Positions 1,948 through 49,355 of a stretch of DNA of 64,000 bases are shown piece after piece. The notes below the pieces were generated by a model. That model saw nothing but the letters and a program-made list of their open reading frames with translations. It searched no databases and was not told the origin of the DNA. A program made the translations under genes and the position numbers. Origin of the DNA: Macrostomum hystrix (lineage: Eukaryota; Animalia; Platyhelminthes); the NCBI GenBank assembly GCA_950097015.1, contig CATNEN010000037.1, forward strand, positions 2,914,001-2,978,000, given 5' to 3'. Numbering within the stretch: position 1 is the stretch's first letter; each line of letters begins with the position of its first letter.

Positions 1948-4850
1948 GTTTGTCAGCTTTAATTTCTATATTTCTTGTATCTTTTTTCGAAATTATTGAA
2001 ATTGTTTGAATTTGAGTTCCAAAAAAGAATTGGCTGCAAATCGAAAAATAGGATTTTGCGGAGTGTGCTAAACTAGTAGCAGTTTTAGAACGAGGCTCTA
2101 AAATCTACAATAAAGTGTTATTCTGTCTACTACTTTCAGATTGCTTTCATAAAGCCGTTGCAAAGGCCGACAACACGAGGAGAGAGGGCACACGCTTGTA
2201 GATAGGGAGGAAAGAGCTAGGCATTGGCTGGTGAGTGAGAGATTAGACAGCGGAGCGGGTGGCTGGCTAGCTGTAGGGCAGGGAGAGACATGCAGTCTGA
2301 CCAGGCAGTGTACAGCAGGCGTGCCAAGTAGGTCTACTGTGGAAGAAGTCGCCGTCGCCAAGGAAAAGGGGCGGGGCTCGGCAGCCGGTTCTCGCTGGAG
2401 TCTAAAAATAGAAGTTCCAGTGAACGAAAAAACTACACGCGCACACAAGCCGAGAGTTACGGAGAGTAGACAGTTTTAGAAGAGAATGGATTTCCACGAC
2501 ATGCAATGTACAGTCGAAGCTTAGAAAAAAGCGCGTAGTACTTTTCTGCCATTGTACAGAACCGTCACGTCAGAGCAACGTGCTCCTGAGTTGAAATTCT
2601 AAATATGGCAACTTCTAGTGACGCACGTTACTATGTGTTCACTTAACCCTCTAGTGTGCTTGGCCTTAGTCACGACCAATTGAAGCCAGATTGGTTCCCA
2701 AATTTCTTTTGCTGGAAATTTCGTTCAGGTTTCGTCTAGCTAATCGCCTTCCCTTAGGCTTACAAACAGTTAAATGCTAAACACAAATGCATGGAAAAGT
2801 ATTTAGTTCAACTGCTTAGCTCCATTCATTTCGGAACCCTGTGATATTTGGCTATGGTTGTACACTCCATCTAAAATCAATCAGGCATTATATTGAAAAT
2901 TTTGACTCAGATATAGAATTCATAAGACAACTTAATAAAAGTAACTGAATCATGAGCCAAATGTACAAATATAAGCATGATTAAAATAGATGTAGTTTTG
3001 TTTCTTCTAAAATTTACCTTTCTTTAACAGAATATCAAGATTCAAATGACCTTAAAATACATTTAGTCACAGAAATGATGAAGATTTCAGGGTCATAACA
3101 ATGTCATTTGTTACCAAGCAAAGTAGAAAAAATAAAGCATGAAGTAATAAGGTAAATACTGTAAAAGTTAAGTGTTAACAATAGCTTTATCTCTAACTAG
3201 TAAAAAATGTTGGCAAAAAGACAAATACAAATGTTACTAATGAAAAATATCACACTGTAGAAAAAATGAATACTTGGGTACTAACATAGACAAAAAAGAT
3301 CCATGAATAAGAACAAAAAAATACAATATTACATGAGTTTAGATATAAAAAATAAGTTAGCAGACATTAAGTATCAAGCATTTGGATAAGGTACCATGTT
3401 TTTTGAAGAAGTATAGACAAGCACATTGTATAACCTAATTATTCTGAAGGTCATGGACTTCAGTATAGAGAATTAAAGAAAGAAACTAGTTTTATTAATA
3501 TTATAATAATACTTTTACTTTTTTAAATCTTAGATATTACATAGTCAAGACAAAAAATCTTGACAAGAAAGACAAGAGAGGACCAACTGCTGATGAAAAT
3601 TTTATACATAGCTACATATTTATACAATATATCATTTACATATGTAGCAGTTATGCTTTTAAACAAATTAATTTAGCTCCAATATTGCATTTATAAAAAC
3701 TTTCAGTAGGCCTACCGCCTATTACTACTAGATTTCATTATAAAAGTAACAAATTTTCTTAGTATTCCAGATCTCTTACAAGTGTAGAAAGAATGCAATA
3801 AAAAGTGAAGAACTTTTTTAAAATTATCAATCTTTTTAAAAGTTTAGTTTGTACCTATTTTACTTATTATAAGAAACCTTTTTGTATATATATAAACAAA
3901 ACAGCATGCCAGAGTGGAATGAAAACCAATAACATTATAGTTAAGCAATGAGTTTGAAATGTGTTACTATGAGTGGACTAAAGGCCCTTAAAAAAAACTG
4001 TGTGTTTTGAGTGATACTCTTTAACAGAGAGAGAAATATATAGTGATAGGCCTTGTAACACAAGTCATTTTTGTCAATAAAATATTTACATAAGGTTAGC
4101 CCTAGTAACAAACTATGTTCTGCTTCTAGAGTTTTGGTTTTCGGAGAAGTAGAGATAATATATTTTAACAGTATTTTTCACTTCCCTAGACTTCTTAGTA
4201 ATAGACATTAATTATATATTGTGATATAGTGAATTGATAAAACAAAAAATGATTAGACTACTGTTCTTAAAATTAGTTTATGCATTTGAATATTGGTTAC
4301 TACTTGTAAGCATATGTCTATGTCTGTCTAGTTACTACATGTCTATGTTGCTTATTAAAAAAATTATTTGACTTATTTTGCAAGCTTTTCATTGACAAGA
4401 TTTTCAAAACTGATAAAGGTACACATAAATATAATTTGAACTGAGACAAGCAAAAGAAAACTTGTTATTTATTGTTAGAGTTACCATAACAAATAGCATA
4501 TAATATGTACGAGGGGTATTACAGACAGTTCTATATTATGGTTGTACAAGAATAGAATGTCCAAGTTAGCTACAATTCTACTCTCTGTACATATCTATTC
4601 TATTAAATGTAAACTGTAAATGTAAATGTCAATTAAACATTCAACTTGTATGTGAGATAGATAGAATTTTATTATTACCGTTTTAAAACTTTGTGATGTA
4701 AATAAATTTTGTTAGCAAATTATATTACAAAATGTATTCTATTATTATATTAGGTGCTTTTATTTTTCATATAGTAAATAGTATTTTCCTTTAAAAAAGA
4801 AATTAATTATAACATTTGTTTTAGTTTTTCCCGCCACCTCAAAAATTTCA

Positions 4851-4858
4851 TATAAATA
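4851..4858 (+). promoter_or_regulatory. Candidate LTR TATA box (TATAAATA); candidate polyA signal AATAAA at 5347-5352
   Basis: Motif match only. The LTR is AT-rich, so a chance match is possible. Confidence 0.4.
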
Positions 4859-4992
4859 GAAGTAAAATTGTATGTCTCAAAAATATACCTCGCCTTACCT
4901 CGCGCTCTCCCCGCTTGTCTTTGGCGATCAAACAAGAAAGCCAATTCAGCTAGTGTTCTCTAAAATTACATGACTTCGTGTTGATTCTTTAA

Positions 4993-5320
4993 GATTAGAA
5001 CTGTATTAGTTCTGGTCAAAGTTACGCTGTATAATAGTATTGAGCTGTATTAGTTCTATATTATTAACAGGGAGTAAACGTAGTGATCTAAATAAGACGT
5101 ATTGTCTTATTATTTAGGTTAAAATCAACGTATTGTTGATAATAATAAGACGTATTGTCTTATTATTTAGGTTAAAATCAACGTATTGTTGATAATAATA
5201 AGACGTATTGTCTTATTATTTAGGCTAAAATCAACGTACTGTTGATCTAAATAAGACGTATTGTCTTAGTAATTAGGATATATCAACGTACTGTTGATAT
5301 AAATAAGACGTACTGTCTTA
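4993..5320 (+). repeat. Array of 11 GTAYT-loop hairpins including a 53-bp tandem repeat (about 4.5 units); copy in the 3' LTR at 13224-13551
   Basis: Units start at 5091, 5144, 5197, 5250 and 5302. Stems: AATAAGAC/GTCTTATT, ATCAAC/GTTGAT, AGAACT/AGTTCT, GAGCT/AGTTC. Confidence 0.9.
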
Positions 5321-5577
5321 CTGTTTAGGGTGGGTTACCCTGGACAAATAAATAGAGTGAGATCATACGTAGTGTAAGGTCAGTCCTGATCGTGATTACC
5401 GGGCAACTTCAGTCCACCGCGTAAAGCCCCGGAAGACTGGAAATAGGATTTTAGGGAGTGCCTTACCGCTCGGGCACAGTCAGCTACCATAGTAACGCGT
5501 CATTCACGTGATACTAAATAGACAAATATAGAAACTAGGATAAATAATACCGCACACCCGAAACGGCTGCTACAACT

Positions 5578-5596
5578 TGGTGGCAGCGGTGGGATT
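5578..5596 (+). promoter_or_regulatory. Primer-binding site complementary to tRNA-Leu
   Basis: TGGTGGCAGCGGTGGGATT lies 3 nt after the LTR and is the reverse complement of the metazoan tRNA-Leu(AAG/TAG) 3' end AATCCCACCGCTGCCA+CCA (recalled tRNA sequence). Confidence 0.85.
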
Positions 5597-5638
5597 GAAA
5601 TCCGGTAAAACGCACGATCAGACTGGTAACAAATCAAA

Positions 5639-6562
5639 ATGGCTGGAATCAACGACGCCATCGGTCTATTAGCCGAAGAACTGCGAAACAGATTGGAATT
5701 AGGACCATTAAGACATGTAAAAATACAGAAATTCACACCCAGCCAAGACATAAGAATCTGGCTGACAGCTTTCGACCAAAGGTGCGACACGGAAGGAATC
5801 GATGAGGACCACCGAAAGCAAGAGTTACTGGCCAATCTAGACCTATCAACTGCTTTCGCCGCCGTCCAAAGATTGAACCTACCGGAAGAACTCACTTATG
5901 TCGAGTTTAAGGAAAGTCTAATTGAAAGATTTGGAAGATTGGGAAACTCCAGCGAATTCAGGGAAGAGTTCAGAGGTCGGATGCAAGGTCGTAATGAACC
6001 TACCGACGCGTTTGCCGACGTCCTGATTGAACTTGCAACCCGAGCCTTTCCGAATATGAATGGTGAACAGAGAGAAGAGGAGGTAGTGGAGCAATTTATC
6101 AAGGGAGTCAGAATTCCAGCGGACACCCGTGAAAAGCTGATATTTGCCCAGCCCGCCAACCTCCAGGAAGCTCGTCGTATGTTGCGCAGGATCGAAGCAG
6201 CCTGGCATATGTCTCACAAGTCAAGCGGTGTCCGAGCTATTAAGAATGAGGAGGATCGCCAGCTTGATAAATTTGATCTCATCATGAGAGAACAACAAAT
6301 CGAGATTGAGAGACAAAAGCAGGTCATTCAAGAGCTGAAACAGCGGATTGAGGAACAGCAGTCACAGCCACAACCGCTGATGAGTCAGCAATTTCAGCCC
6401 AGATATCCTGGAAACTCACAGTACCGACCCATGCAGGGACCGCATAACTATGCCAACAGCAGGGGCAGAGGTTGTGGTCAGCCCGGACCAATGAGAGCTG
6501 GACATCAGTACAGTGTGAGCCGTCCACCCCAGTCCCACCGGAACCCGGCCTCGGGAAACTGA
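5639..6562 (+). CDS. gag: Gag (307 aa; capsid-like, coiled coil, Q/P-rich tail, no CCHC knuckle)
   Basis: First ORF after the PBS. Retrotransposon capsid-like motifs (LIERFG...FRGRMQGRNEPTDAFADVLIELATRAFP). Confidence 0.9.
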   Translation: MAGINDAIGLLAEELRNRLELGPLRHVKIQKFTPSQDIRIWLTAFDQRCDTEGIDEDHRKQELLANLDLSTAFAAVQRLNLPEELTYVEFKESLIERFGRLGNSSEFREEFRGRMQGRNEPTDAFADVLIELATRAFPNMNGEQREEEVVEQFIKGVRIPADTREKLIFAQPANLQEARRMLRRIEAAWHMSHKSSGVRAIKNEEDRQLDKFDLIMREQQIEIERQKQVIQELKQRIEEQQSQPQPLMSQQFQPRYPGNSQYRPMQGPHNYANSRGRGCGQPGPMRAGHQYSVSRPPQSHRNPASGN

Positions 6563-9500
6563 GTGCCGAGGTGCGGATGAGGCCACGCCCCTCCAGTCAA
6601 GTCCCAGCGAACGTTCAGGCCTCCCAGTTCCGAATTCCGTCCCAGTACAAGTTTTGCTATCCTCGCAAAACGGTACCTGTCTGGAAGGCGTGTAAAAACA
6701 ATGCGATCACACATCATGTGATTCCAACATCACCAAATGCGTTTGCGTTACTAGCACCCAATGCGTCAACACCCAATGCGTCAGCACCCAATGCGTCAGC
6801 ACCCAATGCGTCAACACCCAATGCGTCAGCACCCAATGCGTCAGCACCCAATGCGTCAGCACCCAATGCGTCAGCACCCAATGCGTCAGCACCCAATGCG
6901 TCAGCACCCAATGCGTCAGCACCCATTTCTTCAGCCCCCAATGAATGTGTTTTTCCCAAGAATAAGAAAGAGCCCCGCAAAGCAAAGATGGCGGCAACAA
7001 CCAAGAAGCCTGCCCTCACAGCCAAAGTGGAACTGACCAAGCTGAATGGCTATGAAGCAGTTATCACTGGAAGTGTCAAGAATCAGTCCGTAGACTTCCT
7101 ACTAGACACTGGAGCTAGGAATAATTTCCTCAGCAAATCGACATGGTCAATAATTTTCAAACCAGACCAAATTCAAGAGACAAACAAGAGAGTGTCCACA
7201 TTTGATGGTACTCAGGTACAACTAGAAGGAGAAGTAACAACTAAAATGAGATGTGGCGACATCGAGCTGGAAGTAGAGTTCTTGCTTTGTCAGCATGACT
7301 GTGACGACATTTTGGGAATGGAGTTCTTTCTTAGTCACTGTGAAAGTATCCACCTTGCTAAGGGCATGTTGGTACTAAAGAAAGGTACCTGTGTTCCTAT
7401 GAAGTACACTCGTCTGCCAGTTCGAGTTTGCCGGGTATATACCCAAGAGAGAGTTGTAATTCCGGCTAATAGTGCACTCAGAATTCCAGTGAAGCTCGCC
7501 AGAAACAGTGAAGCCAACTATGGCACTCCTATGACCATCGAGACTATTGGAGATGGAGTGAGAACTAAAGAAGTAACTCTGGAAATGGCACCGACTCTGG
7601 TCACGATGCAAGAAGGAGTTGGGATCGTTGAGATCGTAAATCAACATGCAGTTGATGTCACCCTGTCGAAGTCAGCACTAGTAGGATTGGCGAAACCCAT
7701 GAAAGTGCAAGAACTTACTTATTGGCAGCAGTCTATAGAACCAGAAAGTCAACCTACCGGACGTGTGAATCAGACTCTAACCACAGAGGACGAGTGGATC
7801 AATGAAATAAACATTGGCCCCGAATTGGATGAAGAACAGCGGAAAGCTGTGATCGAATTAATAAAAGAACACAGAGAAGCATTTTCACAGGATGAATTGG
7901 ACATGGGTTTGACTAATCTTGTTACCCATGAGATTTTACTTAATGATAAGACGCCAGTAAGAATCCCAACTCGCCGGATTCCGCCTCATCTGCAAAAGCA
8001 AGTAGACGCGCAACTGGATGACATGTTAGCTAAAAACTTAATTAGGCCGTGTTATTCGCCATATTCAACACCTTTAGTGATTGTACCAAAGAAAGATGGG
8101 ACAATTAGAATCGTGAGCGACTTCCGAGTGCTCAATTCTCGAGTCAACTATGTGCCATACCCATTGCCAAATATTCAGGAAACATTTTCACATCTGACAG
8201 GCAGCGAGTATTTCAGCAGCCTGGATCTAAACTCAGGATATTGGCAGGTACCAATCAAAGAAGAACATAAATACATGACGGCATTTTCAACGCTAAACAG
8301 AGGACAATTTGAGTATGAAGTAATGGCGCAAGGACTATCGAATGCCCCAGGGACATTTCAAAGACTAATGAATTTAGTACTATTAGGAATTCAACATAAG
8401 TTCGCCATGTCTTATATAGACGACATAGTAACCTATTCCAAACAGTTCGAAGAACACCTAGAACATCTGAAAGAAGTATTTAAAAGATTAATTACAGCAG
8501 GATTGAAACTGAGGGCAAAGAAGTGCAACTTATTTCACCACGAGTTAAAGTACTTAGGGCACGTTATCGGAAGAGATGGCCTTCGTACTGATGAGGCCAA
8601 GATAGAAGCAATTAGAACATGGCCGAAGCCCAAAGATGTGAAAGAACTGCGTAGCTTTCTTGGCCTATGCAACTACTATTGTCGCTTTGTAAAGAATTAC
8701 GCTGAAGCAGCTCATCCACTTTTCCAGCTGACCCGAAAAGGTGTCCAGCAATTCCAGTCTAAATGGAATGAAGTGCATGACCAAGCGTTTGAGTCTCTGA
8801 AACAACGAATGATGTCCACAGAAGTCCTAGCATACCCTGAATTTGTCGACAATGAAAAAGTGAGAATGGTCTTAGACACTGATGCCAGCGATGGACGCAT
8901 TGGAGCCTGCCTTGGCCAAATCCAATCAGACGGCATAGAAAGACCAATTGCTTATTTTAGTCGTGCGATGAAAGAGTCAGAGAAACGTTACCCCATTACC
9001 CGGAAAGAACTATTGGCCCTTGTCGATGCAATGAAGCACTTCAGGTTTTACCTGATTGGAAAACGATTTTTGGCCCGAACAGATCATAAAGCGATCCTTT
9101 GGCTATTGAAACAGACGGAAGCAACAGGGATTCTTGGTCGTTGGGTGGAGCGCCTAAGTGAATTCCAGTTCGATCTTGAACATAGAAGCGGCGCAAAGCA
9201 CTCTAACGCGGACAGTCTGTCCAGAAGACCAGCTGAAACTGTGGAAGTAGGTCAAGAGGAAAGTCAAGGAGAGACCCCAGCTACAACCCCACCGACAGTC
9301 GAGAAAGAGAACCCGGCCCTAGCTGTCAAGAGTGAAAGTGTGGAACAGCCTAACAAAGATGGAGAGACCCAGGCTCCGCATCCCATTGCAAGGATCGAGT
9401 CAATTGTCTCCGGTGATGAAGGTGAAATGAGCGATCAGGAGGCCTCGAACGACTCATGTGTACTACAGCCGAGTCTGCCAAACGATCAATCAAATCACAA

Positions 9501-11385
9501 ATCAGCCACACCTAACTCAGAGAATTTCAAATGTGAAGCCCTACTGACCGATTTTCTACCCGTCCCCTTAAAGCGAGAACAGATTCTAGAAGCCCAAGGA
9601 GCTGACCCAGTAATCTCAAAGCTGATTGAGTGGAAGACTGAAGGTCTGACACACCTCCCCATCACACGTAATGTGTCCCCCGAGTTAAAGAAAATGAGTA
9701 AGAAATTCGACGCCATGAAGATTGACCGTGATATATTGCTCATCGAGGAAGATGAAAAGTGGAAAGTAGTATTGCCATCATCGCTGGATAAGCAAGTACT
9801 AAGTGATCTACACAGCAGCCCGTTAGCCGGACATCTCGGAAGAGATAAGACAACCCAGAGAGTCCGTGAAAGATTCTGGAGACCAGGCTTAAGTACTGCT
9901 GTCGAAAAGTACATCGCCGAATGCATTCCGTGTCTGGAAAGCAAAACCAGCAACTACATCCAGGCACCGATTCAATCCTTTCCCATCAGCGAGCCCTTCT
10001 ATCGCTGCCATATAGACATTATCGGTCCTTTGTCAAAAGAAAGTAAAAGAGGACATAAGTATGTACTGACTGTGGTAGACAGTACAACACGTTACCCCTT
10101 TGCTTTTCCGATCAGGAATCAGAAATCGGACACCGTAATCAAAATATTGCAAGAACGAATATTCTCCGAGTATGGCCAATGCCATTGGATACATACTGAT
10201 AACGGAAAGACTTTTACCAGCAAACAATTCAAGGCATTCTGCAACCTTTACAACTTGAAACACACATGCACCACGCCGTATCATGCGCAGAGCAATGGTC
10301 TTGTGGAAAGGTTTAATAAGCAGATCAAGTCCATTATTACTTGTTTGATCGAGAAAGATCACAGTAACTGGGATTTGATGATTCCTGCCGCCCTAGTTGC
10401 TGTCCGCACTAGTGTCAACAAAACAACTGGTTTTACACCCCACTTCCTGTTGTTTGGCAGAGAAGCTGTAATGCCGTTAGACAGCCAAATCAAAGAAGCA
10501 GTCGAACATGCCGATTATCCATCATACATCGCCAAACATGCTGAAAGATTAGTCGAAGCTCAGGAGATTGTAAAGAGAAAACTAGAAGGAGTAGTCAGCA
10601 AAAGACAGATAGCAGCAGAAATTAATAAACCACCGAAAGAAGTTCCCATCGGATGCCTAGTATTAATTAATAACCCACAACTGAACAGTGAAGAATCACA
10701 CAAGTTTTATCGGAAGAAAAGATCCGCCTTTCGAGTGCTCAACAAGATTTCAGAGGTAGTTTTCCGAGTGCAGAAAGAAGAGAATGGAATTCGCAGTGGC
10801 AACGTAATGTTGGTCCACCGAGACAACTTAATGCCCATTCCTAACTCAACTGCAGAAGTAACAAATAAGGGAAGCCAGGAGGGCCCCTCAGCCAGCAAGA
10901 AAGGACAGAAAATTAAGGGAAGCCACCCCAGAGCACAGAAACAAATAATTTACATTGAATCGGAAGAATCATCATCGGAGGATGAAATTAATTGGCATTG
11001 CGATATCCGCAGCGAAGCCACAGAAGAAATAAATGAAGAAACAGAAGAATCCGCGATTGAAGAAGAATCTGAAGAGACGGACAATGAAGAAGAGCTTATT
11101 AACGAAGAAAACATCGAAGTTGGAGCTGAAATAGAAGTAGGAGAAGAATTATCTAATGAAATTGAGCCGGCAGTGATTGCAGAGGCTGAGTCAGACAATG
11201 CCGAGATTGAAAGAGAGGGTGGAATGATCGATAAGGAGCCAGCACACACAGAACAAGAAAGAGAGGCCGCCCACCCCACTCCACGATATAATTTACGACA
11301 ACAACCAAGGGGTACGGCACAGTGTGGGTGTCACCTAAAGAGGTTGTTGTCCACTCTCACCTTCCTAGGGAGCATTAAAATTTAA
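6472..11385 (+). CDS. pol: Pol polyprotein (PR, RT, RNase H, integrase), probably made as Gag-Pol by frameshift at about 6559
   Basis: LLDTGA protease; LDLNSGYWQ and YIDD RT; TDASD RNase H; HHCC zinc finger; HIDIIGP/TDNG/GLVERFN DDE integrase. The ORF is uninterrupted. Confidence 0.97.
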   Translation: MWSARTNESWTSVQCEPSTPVPPEPGLGKLSAEVRMRPRPSSQVPANVQASQFRIPSQYKFCYPRKTVPVWKACKNNAITHHVIPTSPNAFALLAPNASTPNASAPNASAPNASTPNASAPNASAPNASAPNASAPNASAPNASAPNASAPISSAPNECVFPKNKKEPRKAKMAATTKKPALTAKVELTKLNGYEAVITGSVKNQSVDFLLDTGARNNFLSKSTWSIIFKPDQIQETNKRVSTFDGTQVQLEGEVTTKMRCGDIELEVEFLLCQHDCDDILGMEFFLSHCESIHLAKGMLVLKKGTCVPMKYTRLPVRVCRVYTQERVVIPANSALRIPVKLARNSEANYGTPMTIETIGDGVRTKEVTLEMAPTLVTMQEGVGIVEIVNQHAVDVTLSKSALVGLAKPMKVQELTYWQQSIEPESQPTGRVNQTLTTEDEWINEINIGPELDEEQRKAVIELIKEHREAFSQDELDMGLTNLVTHEILLNDKTPVRIPTRRIPPHLQKQVDAQLDDMLAKNLIRPCYSPYSTPLVIVPKKDGTIRIVSDFRVLNSRVNYVPYPLPNIQETFSHLTGSEYFSSLDLNSGYWQVPIKEEHKYMTAFSTLNRGQFEYEVMAQGLSNAPGTFQRLMNLVLLGIQHKFAMSYIDDIVTYSKQFEEHLEHLKEVFKRLITAGLKLRAKKCNLFHHELKYLGHVIGRDGLRTDEAKIEAIRTWPKPKDVKELRSFLGLCNYYCRFVKNYAEAAHPLFQLTRKGVQQFQSKWNEVHDQAFESLKQRMMSTEVLAYPEFVDNEKVRMVLDTDASDGRIGACLGQIQSDGIERPIAYFSRAMKESEKRYPITRKELLALVDAMKHFRFYLIGKRFLARTDHKAILWLLKQTEATGILGRWVERLSEFQFDLEHRSGAKHSNADSLSRRPAETVEVGQEESQGETPATTPPTVEKENPALAVKSESVEQPNKDGETQAPHPIARIESIVSGDEGEMSDQEASNDSCVLQPSLPNDQSNHKSATPNSENFKCEALLTDFLPVPLKREQILEAQGADPVISKLIEWKTEGLTHLPITRNVSPELKKMSKKFDAMKIDRDILLIEEDEKWKVVLPSSLDKQVLSDLHSSPLAGHLGRDKTTQRVRERFWRPGLSTAVEKYIAECIPCLESKTSNYIQAPIQSFPISEPFYRCHIDIIGPLSKESKRGHKYVLTVVDSTTRYPFAFPIRNQKSDTVIKILQERIFSEYGQCHWIHTDNGKTFTSKQFKAFCNLYNLKHTCTTPYHAQSNGLVERFNKQIKSIITCLIEKDHSNWDLMIPAALVAVRTSVNKTTGFTPHFLLFGREAVMPLDSQIKEAVEHADYPSYIAKHAERLVEAQEIVKRKLEGVVSKRQIAAEINKPPKEVPIGCLVLINNPQLNSEESHKFYRKKRSAFRVLNKISEVVFRVQKEENGIRSGNVMLVHRDNLMPIPNSTAEVTNKGSQEGPSASKKGQKIKGSHPRAQKQIIYIESEESSSEDEINWHCDIRSEATEEINEETEESAIEEESEETDNEEELINEENIEVGAEIEVGEELSNEIEPAVIAEAESDNAEIEREGGMIDKEPAHTEQEREAAHPTPRYNLRQQPRGTAQCGCHLKRLLSTLTFLGSIKI
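6553..6623 (+). promoter_or_regulatory. -1 ribosomal frameshift signal: slippery G GGA AAC plus predicted H-type pseudoknot
   Basis: The heptamer (6553-6559) is in the gag frame directly before TGA, and pol is in the -1 frame. Stem 1 is 6568-6575/6586-6593; stem 2 is 6579-6584/6618-6623. Confidence 0.8.
6754..6948 (+). repeat. In-frame 15-bp minisatellite encoding (A/T)PNAS x11 plus 2 degenerate units
   Basis: GCACCCAATGCGTCA tandem array inside the pol ORF, upstream of the protease. Confidence 0.95.
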
Positions 11386-11511
11386 GCTAAACAAAGAAAG
11401 AAGGGGTCTATGTACACAAGGGAGAGAAAGAGAAGGGGTTGGTGCAACCAATGGAAGGCCCGGAGGCTATGAAAGGAAGGAAACTATTACGTAACCCCCT
11501 CTCCAGAACTC

Positions 11512-11519
11512 TATATAAA
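11512..11519 (+). promoter_or_regulatory. Candidate internal TATA box (TATATAAA) upstream of ORF3
   Basis: Lies in the non-coding gap between the pol stop (11385) and the ORF3 ATG (11637), after a GA-rich stretch. Confidence 0.55.
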
Positions 11520-11636
11520 CAGAGCCCCTGTGGCGTAAAGAAGTTAATTGTTTTCTCGTATTGAGAATTCTTAAAGCTCCTCAATTCGTACTGAATTTTG
11601 AAGCGACCAGCAAATCACATCAATCTCGTATTGAGA

Positions 11637-12698
11637 ATGATCAGGACTGTATCACAGGAGGACCTCGCGCAGCAATTAATGTTAAGCGATAGCGAGAATG
11701 AGGAAACAGACCTCGTGGACCAATTGTTTCTAAGTGACAGTGACAATGTCGCCCAAGTATGGGAACGAGAAGCAGAGAATGAAGCACCCATGAAACAGCC
11801 AACCCGGCCTAAGCCTGTAGGAGTTACAAAGAAGATAATCAAGCAAAAAGGGCCGGAGGTGCGTACTGCGCCTACCGTACCAACAGCTTTGGAAAAATCA
11901 CAACCGCTACCCACGGTTCTTCAGGCGGTAAAAGTAAATAATAAGCCGCCCACACAGAAGCCTGCAGCTATGCCACCACAAGGGCGAAAGAGATTGTCAT
12001 CAGTGGTAACCAGACCCACTATAGACAAGCATAAGTTACTACGCATACAGGCGGATACTCCTGTAGTAGTGCCTAAAGAATTGACAAATCGTTACCCTGA
12101 CGGTGCTAAGACCAGCACTCTATTAACTCAATCAACCTGGCGGGCCCCTCCAAAGACAACCCGCAAGTGGCAAAAGCCGCAACCATTAGAATTGCCGCCA
12201 CAAGCGCACTCAAAGAAACCAGGGCACTCTGTTTCGCTAGGCAAGTCCGCTTCACCACCTCGTGATCCAAGAAAGTTGCCACAGCCAGAAGACCTAAGAC
12301 AACTAATTAAGGCCGACACATCAAAATCATCATCAATTAGTATGGGTGAAGACTATGGGACATTATTGCACACGTTGGAAGAAACTCAGCAACAACAATT
12401 AAAACGTCAAGTCGCCCTATTGAAACAATATTACTTAAGAGTTGGCCGATATGAGGATAAACGATCACCACCGAAGCGAGAGGAGATTGCGCAAGTAATC
12501 AATAAACTCCAGCGCAATTTCTCGCCTGAACTTGCAGTGGCTGCATGGCGGCGAGCCACACAGTATGCTTTACATTCATTGGATTCAATCGTCAAAGGAT
12601 TTGACGTATCGAAGATGCGCACCGAAGCAAGCTGGATCGGCCAGGAGGTCGGCTGGCCCTTCAAGGACCAACTTCCAGAGGAATTTGCAATGGAGTGA
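11637..12698 (+). CDS. ORF3 of the retrotransposon, 353 aa, unknown function, not env-like
   Basis: Intact sense ORF between pol and the PPT. Acidic N-terminus, Pro/Lys-rich middle, helical-looking C-terminus; no signal peptide or TM segment. Confidence 0.8.
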   Translation: MIRTVSQEDLAQQLMLSDSENEETDLVDQLFLSDSDNVAQVWEREAENEAPMKQPTRPKPVGVTKKIIKQKGPEVRTAPTVPTALEKSQPLPTVLQAVKVNNKPPTQKPAAMPPQGRKRLSSVVTRPTIDKHKLLRIQADTPVVVPKELTNRYPDGAKTSTLLTQSTWRAPPKTTRKWQKPQPLELPPQAHSKKPGHSVSLGKSASPPRDPRKLPQPEDLRQLIKADTSKSSSISMGEDYGTLLHTLEETQQQQLKRQVALLKQYYLRVGRYEDKRSPPKREEIAQVINKLQRNFSPELAVAAWRRATQYALHSLDSIVKGFDVSKMRTEASWIGQEVGWPFKDQLPEEFAME

Positions 12699-12870
12699 AA
12701 ATTTTTTTGTAAATTGGACTTTCGTTTTAGTATACCTATCCCCGTGCCTATAATCTCTGTCTATGTTTTACCTTTTATGCCTACGCCTATGTTTTATTCT
12801 TTGTGCTTATTCTTTGTGTTTATTTTTAGTGTTTGATTATTTTTTCACTTTTTCCTTCAAAAATCATCTT

Positions 12871-12883
12871 AAGGGAAGCCAGT
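12871..12883 (+). other. Polypurine tract
   Basis: AAGGGAAGCCAGT immediately 5' of the 3' LTR. Confidence 0.6.
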
Positions 12884-13805
12884 TGAGATAGATAGAATTT
12901 TATTATTACCGTTTTAAAACTTTGTGATGTAAATAAATTTTGTTAGCAAATTATATTACAAAATGTATTCTATTATTATATTAGGTGCTTTTATTTTTCA
13001 TATAGTAAATAGTATTTTCCTTTAAAAAAGAAATTAATTATAACATTTGTTTTAGTTTTTCCCGCCACCTCAAAAATTTCATATAAATAGAAGTAAAATT
13101 GTATGTCTCAAAAATATACCTCGCCTTACCTCGCGCTCTCCCCGCTTGTCTTTGGCGATCAAACAAGAAAGCCAATTCAGCTAGTGTTCTCTAAAATTAC
13201 ATGACTTCGTGTTGATTCTTTAAGATTAGAACTGTATTAGTTCTGGTCAAAGTTACGCTGTATAATAGTATTGAGCTGTATTAGTTCTATATTATTAACA
13301 GGGAGTAAACGTAGTGATCTAAATAAGACGTATTGTCTTATTATTTAGGTTAAAATCAACGTATTGTTGATAATAATAAGACGTATTGTCTTATTATTTA
13401 GGTTAAAATCAACGTATTGTTGATAATAATAAGACGTATTGTCTTATTATTTAGGCTAAAATCAACGTACTGTTGATCTAAATAAGACGTATTGTCTTAG
13501 TAATTAGGATATATCAACGTACTGTTGATATAAATAAGACGTACTGTCTTACTGTTTAGGGTGGGTTACCCTGGACAAATAAATAGAGTGAGATCATACG
13601 TAGTGTAAGGTCAGTCCTGATCGTGATTACCGGGCAACTTCAGTCCACCGCGTAAAGCCCCGGAAGACTGGAAATAGGATTTTAGGGAGTGCCTTACCGC
13701 TCGGGCACAGTCAGCTACCATAGTAACGCGTCATTCACGTGATACTAAATAGACAAATATAGAAACTAGGATAAATAATACCGCACACCCGAAACGGCTG
13801 CTACA
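12884..13805 (+). repeat. 3' LTR
   Basis: Direct repeat of 4653-5574, followed by TSD TATG. Confidence 0.97.
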
Positions 13806-15500
13806 TATGAATAATTAAACATATAGCTCTTTAAAAAAAATAGCATGTCTAGTTCCTAAGTAAAAAAAATTTAATAAAACAGATGTTTAGAAAGAATGCA
13901 TATAAAAGTCAAATACTGAAATCATCAATAAAATCTGACTTTAACCATTCTCTTCCAAAAATGTAACACTAGATTTCTCCCTTCTGTCTAAATCATTTGA
14001 TTAGCCTTAATACAGACTATACTATTACTAGCTACCTATTGCAATCGGCAGTTAGTTTTTTAGTTAAATGTTTTTAGTCAAATGTTTCAGTTTAGCTATG
14101 AGAAGTTAAGAACTAAGGGGACTAGCCCCATGCATTTAGGCCATAAGAAATATTATGGTCAAAAATATACTCACACTTTGAAGTAGTCTTATGTCCTGGA
14201 AGTTGATTATCAGAAACAACAGTCAAAATGAAATATAAACTAATGACTTATAATATAGGCCTAAGAAGTAGCCCAAATGAGGCGACCAAATTTATTTGCA
14301 TAATTAAGTTCATTTAAAAATTGAGCACATCTGAACAGCAAAAATGTAGAAACACAAAAGAAATTGACATTCCATTATTGAATTTGTATTATGATTAAGG
14401 CATTTCATCTGATTCTTATTATTAGTTAGGCCCTACTAGCTCATATTAAATAATAATAATCAATTCTGGATTTGACATCAGATTTGCTTAGTTAGGCTAC
14501 GCAAAAATGAAAAATTATCAGCACATTATTACATGTTACTTTGCTATAGAATAGCTAGGCCTAACAAAATAGTTTTAAATATGATCTCGTACTAATCGTT
14601 AAGAACAAGATAATTTATTTTATAGTTACTGAAATCTGAAATGCTTAATGTATATGTAGGTAGGTCAAGCCAATATCCAACAGTTGTAGCTACACTGTAG
14701 CCGTGGCAGGAATTCTATGCCACGGGCCCATTTAGCTGTATTTTAAAAAGTACATAAGCTATTTATATAATCGTGTTATTGTTCTTGTTAACACACCGGG
14801 ACGAAGGGAACGGTAAAGCGTGAGGTTTAAATTCCTTTTCGTAAAACAAAGTTATCATAATAATAGTTTTTAGTAAAGTAAAGCAACAGTTTTCAAACTT
14901 AGTCTCGTTAAAATCTAAAAATAATATCAACTTTTTTATAAATAAGAACGTAAAAATATAACTGGACAACGACAAAGTTGGGGCAAACATTGCTTTTGTA
15001 AAAAAGAAACATTATGCATTAATAATAAACAGAGGAGCAGATATTTTACTGGTTCCATTTTTCCAAGCCTTCATATTTTCGGTTCCTTTTTTGTGGAATA
15101 TATCTAGGGTGAATATTTTCATGATATTATTATGATCGCACGTGCTTTTACAGTTCAGTTATTCCAGTTTAAACAAAAGCTACTTGAATTTTTTTTGCCT
15201 TTAGGTTTTTAGGCTTGCTTTTATTTATTTTATTTTATTTCTGAGTTTTTTTACTACTAAATGTGAGCTAATTGAGTTGTTCTAGGCTTGTGTTAAGAGT
15301 CTTAAATTTTCAACGTTCTTTTCTTGTTCTGTTTTTGCGACTTATTGTTATCCTCCGTAACCTTACAATGCAACATATAAGCTTCGTACTAACAAGGCAA
15401 AAATGTTAGAAATCATGTAATGGTATAATCTTATAGCTTCATGTCTGTCTCGACATTGCTGTTTTCTTCTGTATTACAGATCATTTAGCTAATTAAGAAG

Positions 15501-22496
<6,996 letters not shown>

Positions 22497-32674: not shown

Positions 32675-35366
32675 TCAAAAAAACTGATTTTCGGCTTCAA
32701 AAGCGTTGTTGACGACGCCGGCGCCACTGCCGCCGCCATTCTCGGGACCAGGATTTTCGTTACGAGGTGAGCTAGATGTCGGAGCAGCAGCTGGCCGCTT
32801 GACAAACCTGGGCACCACTTCCACTTCGCCACAGTCGCTAGGCCGATCAGCTGGCGACTGGCTTGACACCGAGACCCTAGCGGAGTTTCGCACATTGGGT
32901 CTCGGTGATAATTGAGGCATGTCTGCTGGAGGCTCTACACGGACATCGTCGGGCCCTACAGCTGCGGACGAGCCCAGGTATCGCTCCAAGTCCAGATTGG
33001 CAAAGTCCGTCATGCACGTCAGCACGAAGCTCGGAAAACTCTCTCCAGGCGGCGCCTCGACGCTGTATTCATCCGGGCCGCCGGCCGTGTCAACGTCGCG
33101 CACAGCGAAGGAGCCGGTGACGCGAACGTGAAGGAGGAAGCGGCGAGAGGAGTATTCCACCGGCGTGCTGCACTCGCGATTGCGCCTGATCGCGGCGCTG
33201 TCAATCTCGCAGGGCACGTGCAGACGCCGGGCGCCCGAAGATGACAGTGGTGCCATCTGAATGCCGCTTGTTGAGGCTGCAACTCCAGCGGCAGCTGAAG
33301 CAATCGCCGATGCCATGGCCGTCGCCGGTACCATGATTGGGTGCCGGTAGCCGTAGCGTGCGGGTCGGCATCTGATGAATTTGAGCAGAAAATCTTAAGC
33401 GCTTGATGCAGAATGTTGTTTTCTAATCTCATTGTGCTTATCATCTCCAAATTGGTAATCAACCACGCTTAAAGGGAAGTGGGCATAATGGCGAAAATGA
33501 ACAGTGAGGTCATGAAAGGCTGTAAATAAGCAAGCATGTTAACTGCAATTAAGAGACACGTTGAAACTTTGAACCATAATTTGAGAGACACTGAGACAAA
33601 AAGTATAAAACTTTAAGAAAATAAGCTATTGTTCCCATAGCTTAAAAATATTTCACTTACAGGAAAAGTAAAAAATTGATACTTTAATAAGCATCCCACT
33701 TTATCACATTCAATCTAGTGCTGTCCCGCAGCCATATGCCTAGCCCCATGTCCCTTGTTGCTCTACTCACCTGCCGGAGGCTCTGGCTCGCTTTCGTCGG
33801 ACCCTCTTGACTAATGAGCGGCCGCTGGCCTCGTCTCTGTGCAGGTAAAGCAGAGCTGGAGCGCGGAAAATCTCGCGCATGTCCCAGCTGACTGTGCGGC
33901 CAGCCACCCTGGCTAGAACCCGGCGCCGGCAGGGGCAGCAGCTGAGCACGCCCGCGCCGTGGTAGTCCGGCGTGAAAACGAGACCCTGCAGATCCAACTC
34001 CGAGATGTCGCTTTGACAGCGCACGAAAGCGCAGAGCAGTAGCCGGCAGAGATACCTGTTGAGAACAAAGGAAGAGAGATGAGAACAGATTGAGAGAGAT
34101 GAGAACAGATTGACAGAGATGAGAACAGAGTGAGAGAGATGAGAACAAAGAAAGAGAGATGAGAACAGATTGAGAGAGATGAGAACAGAGTGAGAGAGTT
34201 GAGAACAGAGGAAGAGAGATGAGAACAGATTGACAGAGATGAGAACATATTGAGAGAGATGAGAACAGATTGAGAGAGATGAGAACAGAGTGAGCGAGAT
34301 GAGAACAGAGTGAGAGAGATGAGAACAGAGGAAGAGAGATGAGAACAGAGTGAGAGAGATGAGAACAGAGGAAGAGAGATGAGAACAGAGGAAGAGATAT
34401 GAAAACAGAGGAAGAGAGATGAGAACAGAGGAAGAGAGATGAGAACAGAGTGAGAAAGATGAGAACAGAGGAAGAGAGATGAGAACAGAGTGAGAGAGAT
34501 GAGAACAGAGGAAGAGAGATGAGAACAGAGTGAGAGAGATGAGAACAGATTGAGAGAGATGAGAACAGAGTGAGCGAGATGAGAACAGAGTGAGAGAGAT
34601 GAGAACAGAGGAAGAGAGATGAGAACAGAGTGAGAGAGATGAGAACAGATTGAGAGAGATGAGAACAGAGTGAGCGAGATGAGAACAGAGTGAGAGAGAT
34701 GAGAACAGAGGAAGAGAGATGAGAACAGAGTGAGAGAGATGAGAACAGAGGAAGAGAGATGAGAACAGAGGAAGAGATATGAAAACAGAGGAAGAGAGAT
34801 GAGAACAGAGGAAGAGAGATGAGAACAGAGTGAGAGAGATGAGAACAGAGGAAGAGAGATGAGAACAGAGTGAGAGAGATGAGAACAGAGGAAGAGAGAT
34901 GAGAACAGAGGAAGAGAGATGAGAGATGAGAACAGAGTGAGAGAGATGAGAACAGAGGAAGAGAGATGAGAACAGAGGAAGAGAGATGAGAACAGAGGAA
35001 GAGAGATGAGAACAGAGGAAGAGAGATGAGAACAGAGGAAGAGAGATGAGAACAGAGGAAGAGAGATGAGAACAGGTTCGAGTACAGGGAATCAAATCAG
35101 GCCAAGCAAAGCAGCGATCCGCGTCCCACCTGGCCACCCGCCTGACGTCCTCCTGGCCGTGCAGGGAGCCCAACTGCCACTCGTAGACCAGGCAGAACTG
35201 GCGCAGCAGCCGCAGCGCTATGGCCTTCGTCTTCTCGGCTGAGTCCGCGTCGCCAAGGAGCCGGCCGAGCCGCGAGTTTGGCCGAGCTCCGCGGCCGCGC
35301 CGATTGGCCAGGCTCGACCAGGCCTGCTCACTGCTGCTCAGAAAGTCGCGCAGCTTCTGGTCATAG
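32675..35366 (-). CDS. Uncharacterised multi-exon gene, 3' part (35366-35130, 34055-33771, 33371-32675; possible upstream exon near 36590-36470)
   Basis: Three phase-2 junctions with GT/AG give one open frame (YDQKLRDFL...RYLCRLLLCAF...WDMREIFRAPAL...CRPARYGYR...). No family recognised. Confidence 0.65.
34058..35075 (+). repeat. 20-bp GA-rich minisatellite filling almost a whole intron
   Basis: GAGATGAGAACAGAGGAAGA and variants, roughly 50 units. Confidence 0.97.
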
Positions 35367-49015: not shown

Positions 49016-49355
49016 ATTCAACACACAAATGGTCCAACACATATGGTCCAACACATATGGTCCAACACATATGGTCCAACACATATGGTCCAACACATAT
49101 GGTCCAACACATATGGTCCAACACATATGGTCCAACACATATGGTCCAACACATATTTTCCAACATAATGGTCCAACACACAAATGGTCCAACACATATT
49201 TTCCAACATAATGGTCCAACATAATGGTCTAACACATATGGTCCAGCACATATATTCTCCATCACATTGGTCCAACACATATGGTCCAACACATAAGGTC
49301 CAACTCATATTTTTCGACACATATGGTCCAGCACATGTGGTCCAACACATATGGT
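49016..49355. repeat. 14-bp tandem repeat (GGTCCAACACATAT)n
   Basis: About 10 near-perfect units followed by degenerate ones. Confidence 0.95.

What the first reader, a model, noticed from the sequence alone, without database searches (positions are those of the whole stretch)
11512..11873. Same GTAYT hairpins recur behind an internal TATA box ahead of ORF3: candidate Tat/TAR- or Tas-like circuit in a Gypsy element
Seen: TATATAAA (11512), then TTCTC-GTATT-GAGAA (11553-11567), AATTC-GTACT-GAATT (11583-11597) and TCTC-GTATT-GAGA (11624-11636, abutting the ORF3 ATG at 11637), plus AGGTGC-GTACT-GCGCCT inside ORF3 (11857-11873). These stems are unrelated to the LTR stems but have the identical loop. 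The other GTAYT pentamers I checked in pol lacked such stems (not exhaustive). The layout TATA-then-hairpins is thus repeated at the LTR and at a second, internal unit. Established analogies: HIV Tat binds the TAR hairpin in R, and foamy viruses express the Tas transactivator from an internal promoter. Inference: ORF3 (or Gag, or a host RNA-binding protein) binds these hairpins to autoregulate ORF3 and control LTR transcripts. I am not aware of such a system in Ty3/Gypsy elements but cannot search the literature.
Basis: partly seen in the sequence, partly recalled or inferred. Interest (0 to 1): 0.85.

Follow-up and report, generated by a model that had tools for sequence, protein, structure and literature searches.

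The report
Loop-conserved hairpins in flatworm retrotransposon
A young Ty3/Gypsy retrotransposon of a Macrostomum-like flatworm carries a real, non-random family of small RNA-type hairpins with the same GTAYT loop, both in its LTRs and just ahead of an orphan third gene that sits behind the element's only internal TATA box. Nothing yet shows that this third gene binds the hairpins or acts like HIV Tat.

Summary
**Observation: confirmed.** Every quoted string is at its stated coordinate.
- In 64 kb, all 23 GTAYT pentaloop hairpins with a Watson-Crick stem of at least 4 bp lie on the sense strand of one element. There are ten per identical LTR and three at 11553-11636. A G.U-containing one lies at 11857-11873.
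- None of the 193 GTAYT pentamers outside the element has such a stem.
- Expected number in the internal region is 0.02; three were observed.
- Seven different stems carry the same loop, and almost all have a C-G closing pair. This argues for a folded single strand rather than a duplex protein site.

**The element.** It is intact: 922-bp LTRs at 100% identity, TSD TATG, gag, pol ordered PR-RT-RH-IN, and ORF3. Its nearest relatives are Macrostomum lignano elements.

**ORF3.** It is a real but orphan gene, with a homologue in the 65-72% pol relative and no Pfam, PDB, Foldseek or Rfam match.

**Internal TATA.** The TATA at 11512 is the only one in the 7.3-kb interior. No ATG lies between it and ORF3, and it is conserved in that relative.

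**Limits on the interpretation.**
- That relative keeps ORF3 without the LTR hairpins.
- The internal stems are thermodynamically weak.
- The LTR array lies about 240 nt past its TATA, which is not TAR-like.

**Verdict.** The cis motif is real and new. The Tat/Tas-like circuit remains speculative.

The parts
4649..4652 (.). Target-site duplication TATG (second copy at 13806-13809)
   Evidence: Read directly
4653..5574 (+). 5' LTR, 922 bp, TG...CA, 100% identical to the 3' LTR
   Evidence: Position-by-position identity plot
4851..4858 (+). LTR TATA box (copy at 13082-13089). It aligns with the TATA of the L001 LTR.
4993..5017 (+). GTATT hairpin with T-A closing pair (6 WC + 2 G.U + 2 WC pairs). 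A weaker one lies at 5042-5056. Both can refold as triloops.
5091..5320 (+). Array of nine C-G-closed GTAYT pentaloop hairpins with stems of 6-11 bp. Two stem types alternate within 4.5 copies of a 53-nt tandem repeat. Copy in the 3' LTR at 13322-13551.
5347..5352 (+). AATAAA directly after the array, the only one downstream of the LTR TATA. Candidate poly(A) signal, which would put the array in R (inference).
5578..5595 (+). Putative primer-binding site. The only leader stretch that still aligns with L003 and L001.
5639..6562 (+). gag ORF, open, 307 aa. No CCHC knuckle at the position where L001 gag and P0121 have one.
6472..11385 (+). pol ORF, open, 1637 aa, PR-RT-RNaseH-integrase. It overlaps gag in the -1 frame.
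11512..11519 (+). Internal TATA box TATATAAA, the only TATAWAW in the 7.3-kb interior, 125 nt before the ORF3 ATG with no ATG in between. Candidate internal promoter.
11553..11567 (+). Internal hairpin 1, ttctc-GTATT-gagaa
11583..11597 (+). Internal hairpin 2, aattc-GTACT-gaatt. The same stem occurs in the degenerate L001 spacer hairpin.
11624..11636 (+). Internal hairpin 3, tctc-GTATT-gaga. Its 3' arm abuts the ORF3 start codon.
11637..12698 (+). ORF3, open, 353 aa. Acidic N-terminal repeats, a long disordered Pro/basic middle and a helical C-terminal domain. Orphan apart from the ORF3 of related flatworm elements.
11857..11873 (+). Hairpin 4 inside ORF3, aggtgc-GTACT-gcgcct, with one U.G pair that pairs only on the sense strand. 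Local fold z = -2.7.
12871..12883 (+). Polypurine tract next to the 3' LTR, conserved in L003
12884..13805 (+). 3' LTR with the same hairpin array

Best explanation
The GTAYT motifs are sense-strand RNA stem-loops: GUAYU pentaloops on a C-G closing pair, with free choice of the rest of the stem. They serve as repeated recognition sites for one trans-acting partner, most likely a protein that reads the loop.

Layout:
- One array sits in the LTR between the conserved TATA (4851) and the only downstream AATAAA (5347). It is therefore probably in R, and would be present at both ends of the genomic RNA and in the 3' end of every transcript.
- A second cluster of three to four hairpins sits at the very start of the ORF3 unit. 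It lies behind the only internal TATA box and runs up to the ORF3 AUG.
- Sharing the site ties ORF3 expression to the handling of the LTR transcripts. The control is post-transcriptional or co-transcriptional: translation, export, stability or packaging.

Shown:
- The hairpins exist.
- They are confined to the element and to its sense strand.
- The loop and closing pair are conserved over seven different stems and in a second lineage.
- The internal TATA is unique and conserved.
- ORF3 is a conserved gene.

Inferred:
- The hairpins act as RNA.
- The array lies in R.
- The internal TATA fires.
- One partner reads both clusters.

The identity of the partner (ORF3 protein, the knuckle-less Gag, or a host protein) is open.
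For: - All 23 stems of 4 bp or more lie in the element on the + strand. None of the 193 pentamers elsewhere has one.
- 0.02 hairpins are expected in the interior and 3 are observed.
- Seven stem sequences share the same loop, and the closing pair is C-G in 21 of 23. 93% of cells are paired against 50% in shuffles, and all six stem pairs show changes on both sides. The sequences were picked for having stems, so this count is descriptive.
- G.U pairs inside stems at 4993-5017 and 11857-11873 work only on the sense strand.
- The nearest relative, L003 (pol 80% identical), has an LTR that does not align with this one. It still carries tccc-GTATT-ggga on the sense strand, 239 nt after its TATA, against 240 nt here.
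- The covariance model separates members (19.6 bits or more) from background (14 bits or less).
- The internal TATA is unique, with an ATG-free leader, and is conserved in L001.
- ORF3 is conserved at the protein level although the DNA is unalignable.
Against: - The internal stems are only 4-5 bp and AU-rich, and the region folds no better than shuffles. Function would need a stabilising partner.
- L001 keeps ORF3 and the TATA without an LTR array. Its single GTATT hairpin is degenerate and lies upstream of its TATA. The motif is therefore lineage-specific and not required for ORF3.
- There are no transcript data, so the TSS, the poly(A) site and any splicing are unknown.
- L001 and L002 each have a pyrimidine tract plus AG just before the ORF3 ATG. 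ORF3 may therefore be reached by cis- or trans-splicing instead of an internal promoter.
- Only three relatives could be examined, and only two of them cover the ORF3 region.
Confidence: 0.45

Rival explanations
1. ORF3 is a transactivator made from an internal promoter (as spumavirus Tas is). It binds the hairpins on nascent RNA (as lentiviral Tat binds TAR) and boosts both its own unit and LTR transcription.
For: - A unique, conserved internal TATA with an ATG-free leader.
- Internal hairpin 1 would begin about 10 nt into such a transcript.
- ORF3 has acidic-hydrophobic N-terminal repeats, a basic disordered middle and a conserved helical domain. That make-up is compatible with an activator.
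Against: - ORF3 has no similarity to any known regulator.
- No Rfam family matches.
- The C-G-closed LTR hairpins start about 240 nt after the LTR TATA, far from a promoter-proximal position.
- L001 has ORF3 without the LTR hairpins.
- L002 has an ORF3 with neither TATA nor hairpins.
Confidence: 0.12
2. RNA-RNA recognition. The first four loop bases, GUAY, are self-complementary (G-C or G.U at the ends). The hairpins could therefore kiss one another, giving multivalent dimerisation or compaction and selective packaging of the genomic RNA. The internal cluster would mark full-length RNA or fold back onto the terminal arrays.
For: - The only variable loop position is Y, which keeps pairing with G1 in every one of the 15 distinct sites.
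- High copy number at what are probably both RNA ends.
- Gag in this lineage and in L003 lacks the CCHC knuckle that L001 Gag has, and L001 lacks the hairpins. That is only three lineages.
Against: - A five-base loop is tight for a four-pair kiss.
- Roughly a fifth of arbitrary pentaloops would contain a self-complementary tetramer once wobble is allowed (my estimate, not computed).
- Two GTAAT-loop variants in pol, which are not self-complementary, have the same closing pair.
- The array lies upstream of the primer-binding site, not in the usual leader position between that site and gag.
- Nothing explains the placement against the ORF3 AUG.
Confidence: 0.2
3. Duplex-DNA sites. The 53-bp repeats form an enhancer-like array for a host transcription factor that reads CGTAYTG. 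The same sites were recruited in front of ORF3.
For: - Each related lineage has its own repeated motif in the LTR: a repeated 11-mer in L001 and a repeated 10-mer, four copies, in L002. This is typical of fast-turning regulatory arrays.
- M. lignano LTR elements are known to recruit host factor sites (heat-shock elements; PMC12801592).
Against: - A duplex-binding protein has no need for flanks that are complementary to each other yet different at every site. Here the flanks co-vary and only the centre is fixed.
- The sites lie downstream of both TATA boxes.
- All 23 heptamers are in one orientation.
- G.U pairs are tolerated on the sense strand.
Confidence: 0.13
4. No function of their own. 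The palindromes are a by-product of repeat expansion in the LTR, and the internal ones arose by chance or by gene conversion.
For: - Nine of the LTR hairpins arise from only two stem types amplified by one tandem repeat.
- The internal stems are weak.
Against: - The internal cluster has three further, unrelated stems at 0.002-0.02 expected.
- There is no blastn similarity between the spacer and the LTR.
- A further stem occurs in the non-alignable L003 LTR.
Confidence: 0.07

Closest known systems
Lentiviral Tat/TAR and deltaretroviral Rex-responsive structures in R
   Same: - A structured RNA lies in the terminal repeat downstream of the TATA.
- The element carries an accessory gene at its 3' end.
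- As for the Rex-responsive structure, a long folded stretch sits just before the poly(A) signal.
   Different: - There is no homology of ORF3 or of the RNA to these systems.
- Here there are many small identical-loop hairpins rather than one bulged or branched structure.
- They start about 240 nt after the TATA.
- The comparison rests on established knowledge and on blank searches.
Spumavirus internal promoter driving Tas
   Same: A second TATA-type unit lies in the 3' part of the element, directly ahead of an accessory ORF. A motif is shared between that unit and the LTR.
   Different: - Tas acts on duplex DNA sites upstream of the promoters (established knowledge).
- Here the shared motif lies downstream of both TATA boxes and co-varies like a folded single strand.
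- No Tas-like protein match was found.
- The promoter has not been shown to fire.
CERV of the C. elegans Ty3/Gypsy element Cer1 (PMC10309623)
   Same: It is a lineage-restricted, fast-evolving accessory protein of a Ty3/Gypsy element with no homologues outside its clade. It controls the fate of the genomic RNA (nuclear export). This shows that such elements can carry retrovirus-style regulators.
   Different: - CERV comes from a five-exon spliced mRNA that shares its first exons with gag. It has H, M and G-like domains.
- ORF3 lies after pol, is mostly disordered with one helical domain, and gave no related fold hit.
- No cis hairpins are described for CERV in the sections I read.
Retroviral encapsidation and dimerisation hairpins (conserved loops on variable stems)
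   Same: Several hairpins share one short conserved loop, the loop is partly self-complementary, and the stems are free to vary.
   Different: - They lie in the repeat upstream of the primer-binding site and again before ORF3, not between the primer-binding site and gag.
- The copy number is far higher.
Translational operator hairpins that cover a start codon (phage coat-protein operators; cap-proximal iron-responsive elements)
   Same: Hairpin 3 ends on the base before the ORF3 AUG. Hairpin 1 would be cap-proximal if the TATA fires. Both positions are ones where a bound protein blocks initiation.
   Different: No sequence or family relation, and nothing matched in Rfam. This is a purely positional analogy.

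Membership tests
Ty3/Gypsy (Metaviridae) LTR retrotransposon | Identical direct LTRs ending TG...CA, a short target-site duplication, a primer-binding site and a polypurine tract | tested here: met
   922-bp LTRs at 100% identity, TSD TATG, PBS-like stretch and PPT conserved in L003
Ty3/Gypsy (Metaviridae) LTR retrotransposon | pol domain order protease, RT, RNase H, integrase | tested here: met
   Pfam hits in that order. Best relatives are M. lignano Ty3/Gypsy pol proteins.
Errantivirus-type (env-carrying) Gypsy element | ORF3 encodes an envelope glycoprotein | tested here: not met
   No Pfam hit and no fold match. The model is disordered plus helical.
Lentiviral Tat/TAR | An accessory protein related to Tat | tested here: not met
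   No Pfam, PDB or Foldseek hit for ORF3 or for its alignment
Lentiviral Tat/TAR | A single bulged hairpin at the extreme 5' end of R | tested here: inconclusive
   No Rfam match. LTR hairpins begin 140-240 nt after the TATA. The internal cluster would start about +10. The TSS has not been measured.
Spumavirus Tas / internal promoter | A functional second promoter ahead of the accessory gene | tested here: inconclusive
   The TATA is unique and conserved, with an ATG-free leader. There are no transcript data. L002 lacks it.
Spumavirus Tas / internal promoter | A Tas-related DNA-binding transactivator with sites upstream of both promoters | tested here: not met
   No protein match. The shared motif lies downstream of both TATA boxes.
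Cer1 CERV-type regulator | Sequence or fold relation to CERV; made from a spliced mRNA that starts in gag | tested here: inconclusive
   No nematode protein appeared among hits in the large protein searches. Splicing cannot be tested without RNA data. CERV itself was not fetched.
Any curated RNA family (Rfam 15) | A covariance-model match | tested here: not met
   No hit at E <= 1 over 4600-13850 on both strands
Kissing-loop dimerisation hairpins | A self-complementary loop core kept through variation | tested here: met
   GUAC/GUAU in all 15 distinct sites, and only position 4 varies, C or U. Loop-loop pairing itself cannot be tested here.

The most novel reading that the evidence does not exclude
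This clade of flatworm Ty3/Gypsy elements has evolved a complex-retrovirus-style regulatory layer of its own. An orphan accessory protein (ORF3) would be made from an internal promoter. It would read GUAYU pentaloop hairpins placed at its own 5' end and in the terminal repeat, so coupling its own synthesis to the transcription, export or packaging of genomic RNA. This may replace the lost Gag zinc knuckle.
Probability: 0.15. Interest if true: 0.8.

Novelty: new variant of a known kind. Interest (0 to 1): 0.55.

Why it matters
- Accessory regulators with dedicated RNA targets are the hallmark of complex retroviruses. Among Ty3/Gypsy elements the only comparable case found in my literature searches is CERV of Cer1.
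- A second, independent case with a clearly defined cis motif would show that such circuits arise repeatedly in retrotransposons.
- The motif is small, countable and loop-specific. Its partner could therefore be sought directly in a transgenic, regenerating model flatworm lineage.
- Even without ORF3 binding, the motif is a clean natural example of loop conservation with free stems. It is also a marker for tracing this young, probably active family.

Tried and rejected
**ORF3 homology.** All of these were blank:
- Pfam and PHROGs.
- The 5.8-billion word-indexed search and the 1.84-billion representative phmmer search.
- PDB by sequence and by profile.
- Foldseek against PDB and BFVD on a single-sequence model with pLDDT 56.
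- Exact look-up of the three ORF3 proteins.
- These E-values are scaled to the whole database, so a relative as distant as the L001 ORF3 could not have passed.

**Closer relatives.**
- The metagenome pattern scan for the LTR hairpin pair gave 0.
- The metagenome scan with the integrase part gave 0 relatives.
- There is no other copy or solo LTR in the window.

**Does each relative repeat its own LTR motif before ORF3?** No, in both L001 and L002.

**Is the internal cluster a copied piece of LTR?** No blastn similarity.

**Heat-shock elements, as in M. lignano LTRs (PMC12801592).** By eye, the TTC/GAA-containing stems do not have the spacing of the canonical pattern quoted in that paper.

**Rfam.** Nothing.

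**Not done, by rule.**
- No animal-virus comparator (lentivirus, spumavirus, deltaretrovirus) was fetched by any road. The proteins I had in mind were Tat, Tas/Bel1, Rev, Rex and CERV, and none came back as a named hit.
Full report
**1. What is there.**
- The window carries one complete LTR retrotransposon at 4653-13805.
- Its LTRs (4653-5574 and 12884-13805) are 922 bp, begin TG and end CA, and are identical at every position.
- They are flanked by a 4-bp duplication, TATG.
- A primer-binding-site-like stretch follows the 5' LTR, and a polypurine tract precedes the 3' LTR.
- Between the LTRs lie three open reading frames:
  - gag, 5639-6562;
  - pol, 6472-11385, overlapping gag in the -1 frame, with Pfam domains in the order protease, RT, RNase H, integrase;
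  - ORF3, ATG at 11637 to 12698.
- I found no stops or frame changes in any of the three genes.
- The identical LTRs show that the insertion is very young.
- The best pol relatives are two Macrostomum lignano proteins, at 72% and 56% identity over RT-integrase. All other hits are at 48% or less. The host is therefore a macrostomid flatworm or a close relative, and the element is a Ty3/Gypsy retrotransposon without an env-like gene.

**2.
- I scanned all 252 GTAYT pentamers in the window on both strands.
  - Every one flanked by a Watson-Crick stem of at least 4 bp lies on the sense strand of this element: ten per LTR and three at 11553-11636.
  - A fourth internal one, at 11857-11873, has a U.G pair inside a 6-bp stem.
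  - None of the 193 pentamers outside the element has a stem longer than 3 bp.
  - The other 13 pentamers in gag-pol have stems of 3 bp or less.
- Simulated sequences with the same dinucleotide make-up give 0.022 such hairpins in the 7.3-kb interior and 0.0024 in 11386-11900. Three are observed, and no simulation reached that.
- The heptamer CGTAYTG, which is the loop plus its closing pair, occurs 26 times against 9.5 expected. Of these, 23 are in the element and all are on the sense strand.
- The motif is defined by the LTR, so the internal cluster is an independent test.

**3. What kind of object it is.**
- The LTR array (5091-5320) is 4.5 copies of a 53-nt repeat. Each copy holds two hairpins with different stems. 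Two further GTATT hairpins with a T-A closing pair precede it (4993-5017 and 5042-5056).
- Counting the internal ones and one in a relative, seven unrelated stem sequences carry the same loop. The closing pair is C-G in 21 of 23 sites.
- On an alignment of the instances, 93% of cells pair, against 50% after shuffling and 33-44% for slid partners. All six stem positions show changes on both sides. The instances were chosen for having stems, so this describes the pattern rather than proving it. The proof is the census in section 2.
- A fixed centre with flanks that are free but mutually complementary is the opposite of what a duplex-binding dimer selects. It is what a loop-reading partner of a folded single strand selects.
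- All sites have one orientation. G.U pairs inside two stems pair only on the sense strand. This points, weakly, to the transcript as the folded strand.
- A covariance model built from the instances separates them (19.6 bits or more) from everything else in 68 kb (14.8 bits or less).
- No Rfam family matches the element.
- As RNA the LTR array is very stable (z = -9.4), and the hairpin in ORF3 is moderately stable (z = -2.7).
- The three pre-ORF3 hairpins are weak. They appear in the MFE and centroid folds, but the 121-nt region is no more stable than shuffles (z = +0.73).

**4. Position relative to signals.**
- On the sense strand of the whole element, TATAWAW occurs only at 4851, at 5298 (inside a hairpin) and at 11512.
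- No ATG lies between 11512 and the ORF3 ATG.
- AATAAA occurs in the LTR only at 4701 (before the TATA) and at 5347, directly after the array.
- The LTR TATA aligns with that of the L001 LTR.
- I infer the following:
  - LTR transcripts start near 4880 and end shortly after 5352, so the array lies in R and would sit at both ends of the genomic RNA;
  - a transcript from the internal TATA would carry hairpin 1 about 10 nt from its 5' end and hairpin 3 against its AUG.
- None of this has been measured.

**5. Relatives.** I fetched three chromosomal or assembly loci of related flatworm elements by look-up of proteins returned by the searches. I compared them as they stand.
- **L003** (a Logan contig; pol 80% and gag 75% identical) is the closest.
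  - Its LTR aligns with this one only at the very ends and at the primer-binding site.
  - It nevertheless carries tccc-GTATT-ggga on the sense strand 239 nt after its TATA. The distance here is 240 nt.
  - It also has a degenerate second copy of this hairpin.
  - The contig stops before ORF3.
- **L001** (M. lignano; pol 65% overall and 72% in RT-integrase) is a tandem LTR-internal-LTR-internal-LTR array.
  - Its ORF3 is open (291 aa) in one copy and has one frame change in the other.
  - It matches this ORF3 at both the N-terminal (37% over 54 aa, E 3e-6) and C-terminal (24% over 115 aa, E 3e-7) ends.
  - It has a TATA island that aligns with 11512 and an ATG-free leader.
  - It has no GTAYT hairpin in its LTR. 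It has only one degenerate hairpin, aattc-CGTATTA-gaatt, with the same stem as hairpin 2 here. That hairpin lies in the pol-ORF3 spacer upstream of its TATA, scores at background level, and is the top hit in that locus.
- **L002** (pol 50%) has a 275-aa ORF3 starting 5 nt after the pol stop.
  - It has no TATA and no hairpins.
  - A pyrimidine tract plus AG lies just ahead of the ATG.
  - Its ORF3 shares only a short acidic motif with the others.
- In summary:
  - ORF3 is an old, fast-evolving gene of this clade.
  - The internal TATA is shared by the two closer lineages for which the region is known.
  - The loop motif is shared by the two closest lineages, with a trace in the third.
  - ORF3 can exist without the hairpin array.
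- Each lineage has its own repeated motif in the LTR. Only in this element does the LTR motif recur before ORF3.

**6. ORF3.**
- It has no Pfam or PHROGs family.
- It has no hit in two very large protein searches and no PDB relative by sequence or profile.
- The single-sequence model has low confidence overall (pLDDT 56). It shows short N-terminal helices, a disordered stretch at 50-215 and a helical domain at 217-337 with pLDDT 70-82.
- That model has no significant fold neighbour in PDB or among viral proteins.
- The proteins I had in mind (Tat, Tas/Bel1, Rev, Rex, CERV) did not come back. I fetched none of them and wrote out no letters.

**7. Mechanism.** My best reading, at 0.45, is as follows.
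- The hairpins are sense-strand RNA sites read through the loop and closing pair by one partner.
- They are present in the terminal repeat and at the head of the ORF3 unit.
- ORF3 expression is thereby coupled to the fate of LTR transcripts.
- Where the internal sites lie (cap-proximal and AUG-abutting, if the TATA fires) suits translational or stability control at least as well as transcriptional activation.

The rivals are:
- loop-loop kissing through the self-complementary GUAY core (0.20);
- duplex-DNA factor sites (0.13);
- no function (0.07).

Whether ORF3 is reached from an internal promoter or by cis- or trans-splicing is a separate open point. I put the promoter at about even odds.

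**8. Literature.**
- M. lignano LTR elements belong mainly to the Mag, CsRN1 and Gmr1/Osvaldo clades. Some have recruited heat-shock elements (PMC12801592). That paper mentions neither third ORFs nor hairpins.
- Cer1 of C. elegans encodes CERV, a clade-restricted accessory protein needed for export of genomic RNA (PMC10309623). This is the closest precedent for a regulator in a Ty3/Gypsy element.
- Four full-text searches found no TAR-like or internal-promoter system described for Ty3/Gypsy elements. That is a limited search, not proof of absence.

**9. Conduct.**
- The look-ups of relatives returned flatworm genome or assembly contigs that hold copies of the retrotransposon. I judged this to be the permitted comparison of copies.
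- I fetched no virus of animals.

Noticed in passing
window 5639-6562; L001 8571-9575; L003 1012-1974: Gag of this element and of L003 (the two hairpin-bearing lineages) lacks the CCHC zinc knuckle. L001 Gag and P0121 have it at the aligned C-terminal position, and L001 lacks the LTR hairpins. With only three lineages this is a hint, not a correlation.
   Followed up: partly
window 6753-6943: A 15-nt tandem repeat (12.7 copies, 94% matches) lies in frame in the N-terminal part of pol, upstream of the protease, and encodes a pentapeptide repeat.
   Followed up: no
window 4851 to 5091; L003 200 to 439: The distance from the LTR TATA to the first C-G-closed GTATT hairpin is 240 nt here and 239 nt in L003, although the two LTRs do not align.
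   Followed up: partly
window 9664-9676, 10800-10812 and about 8576-8598: Two 4-bp hairpins in pol have a C-G closing pair and the loop GTAAT (one mismatch). One of them has the same caac/gttg stem as an LTR hairpin. A CGTACTG heptamer lies in an imperfect hairpin in RT. These may be decayed or auxiliary sites, or chance.
   Followed up: partly
L001 7738-24077: The M. lignano relative is a head-to-tail array of two internal regions sharing three LTRs (period about 7898 bp). ORF3 is open in one copy and has one frame change in the other.
   Followed up: partly
L001 16283-16390; L003 790-930: Both relatives carry two or three repeats of the 'LTR end plus primer-binding-site-like' stretch after the LTR. 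This element has one.
   Followed up: no
window 5322-5345: A G+C-rich palindrome (10-bp stem in the fold) lies between the last hairpin of the array and the AATAAA.
   Followed up: no
window 11655-11735: ORF3 starts with two copies of an acidic-hydrophobic 13-residue repeat followed by an acidic motif. That motif is the only piece shared with the ORF3 of all three relatives.
   Followed up: partly
window 18258-18980, 20541-21097, 34060-35075, 37917-38530, 39571-39849, 49023-49356: The window is rich in micro- and minisatellite arrays ((TGTC)n x180, and units of 41, 20, 24, 23 and 14 nt). These account for the strong strand skews in the composition profile.
   Followed up: no
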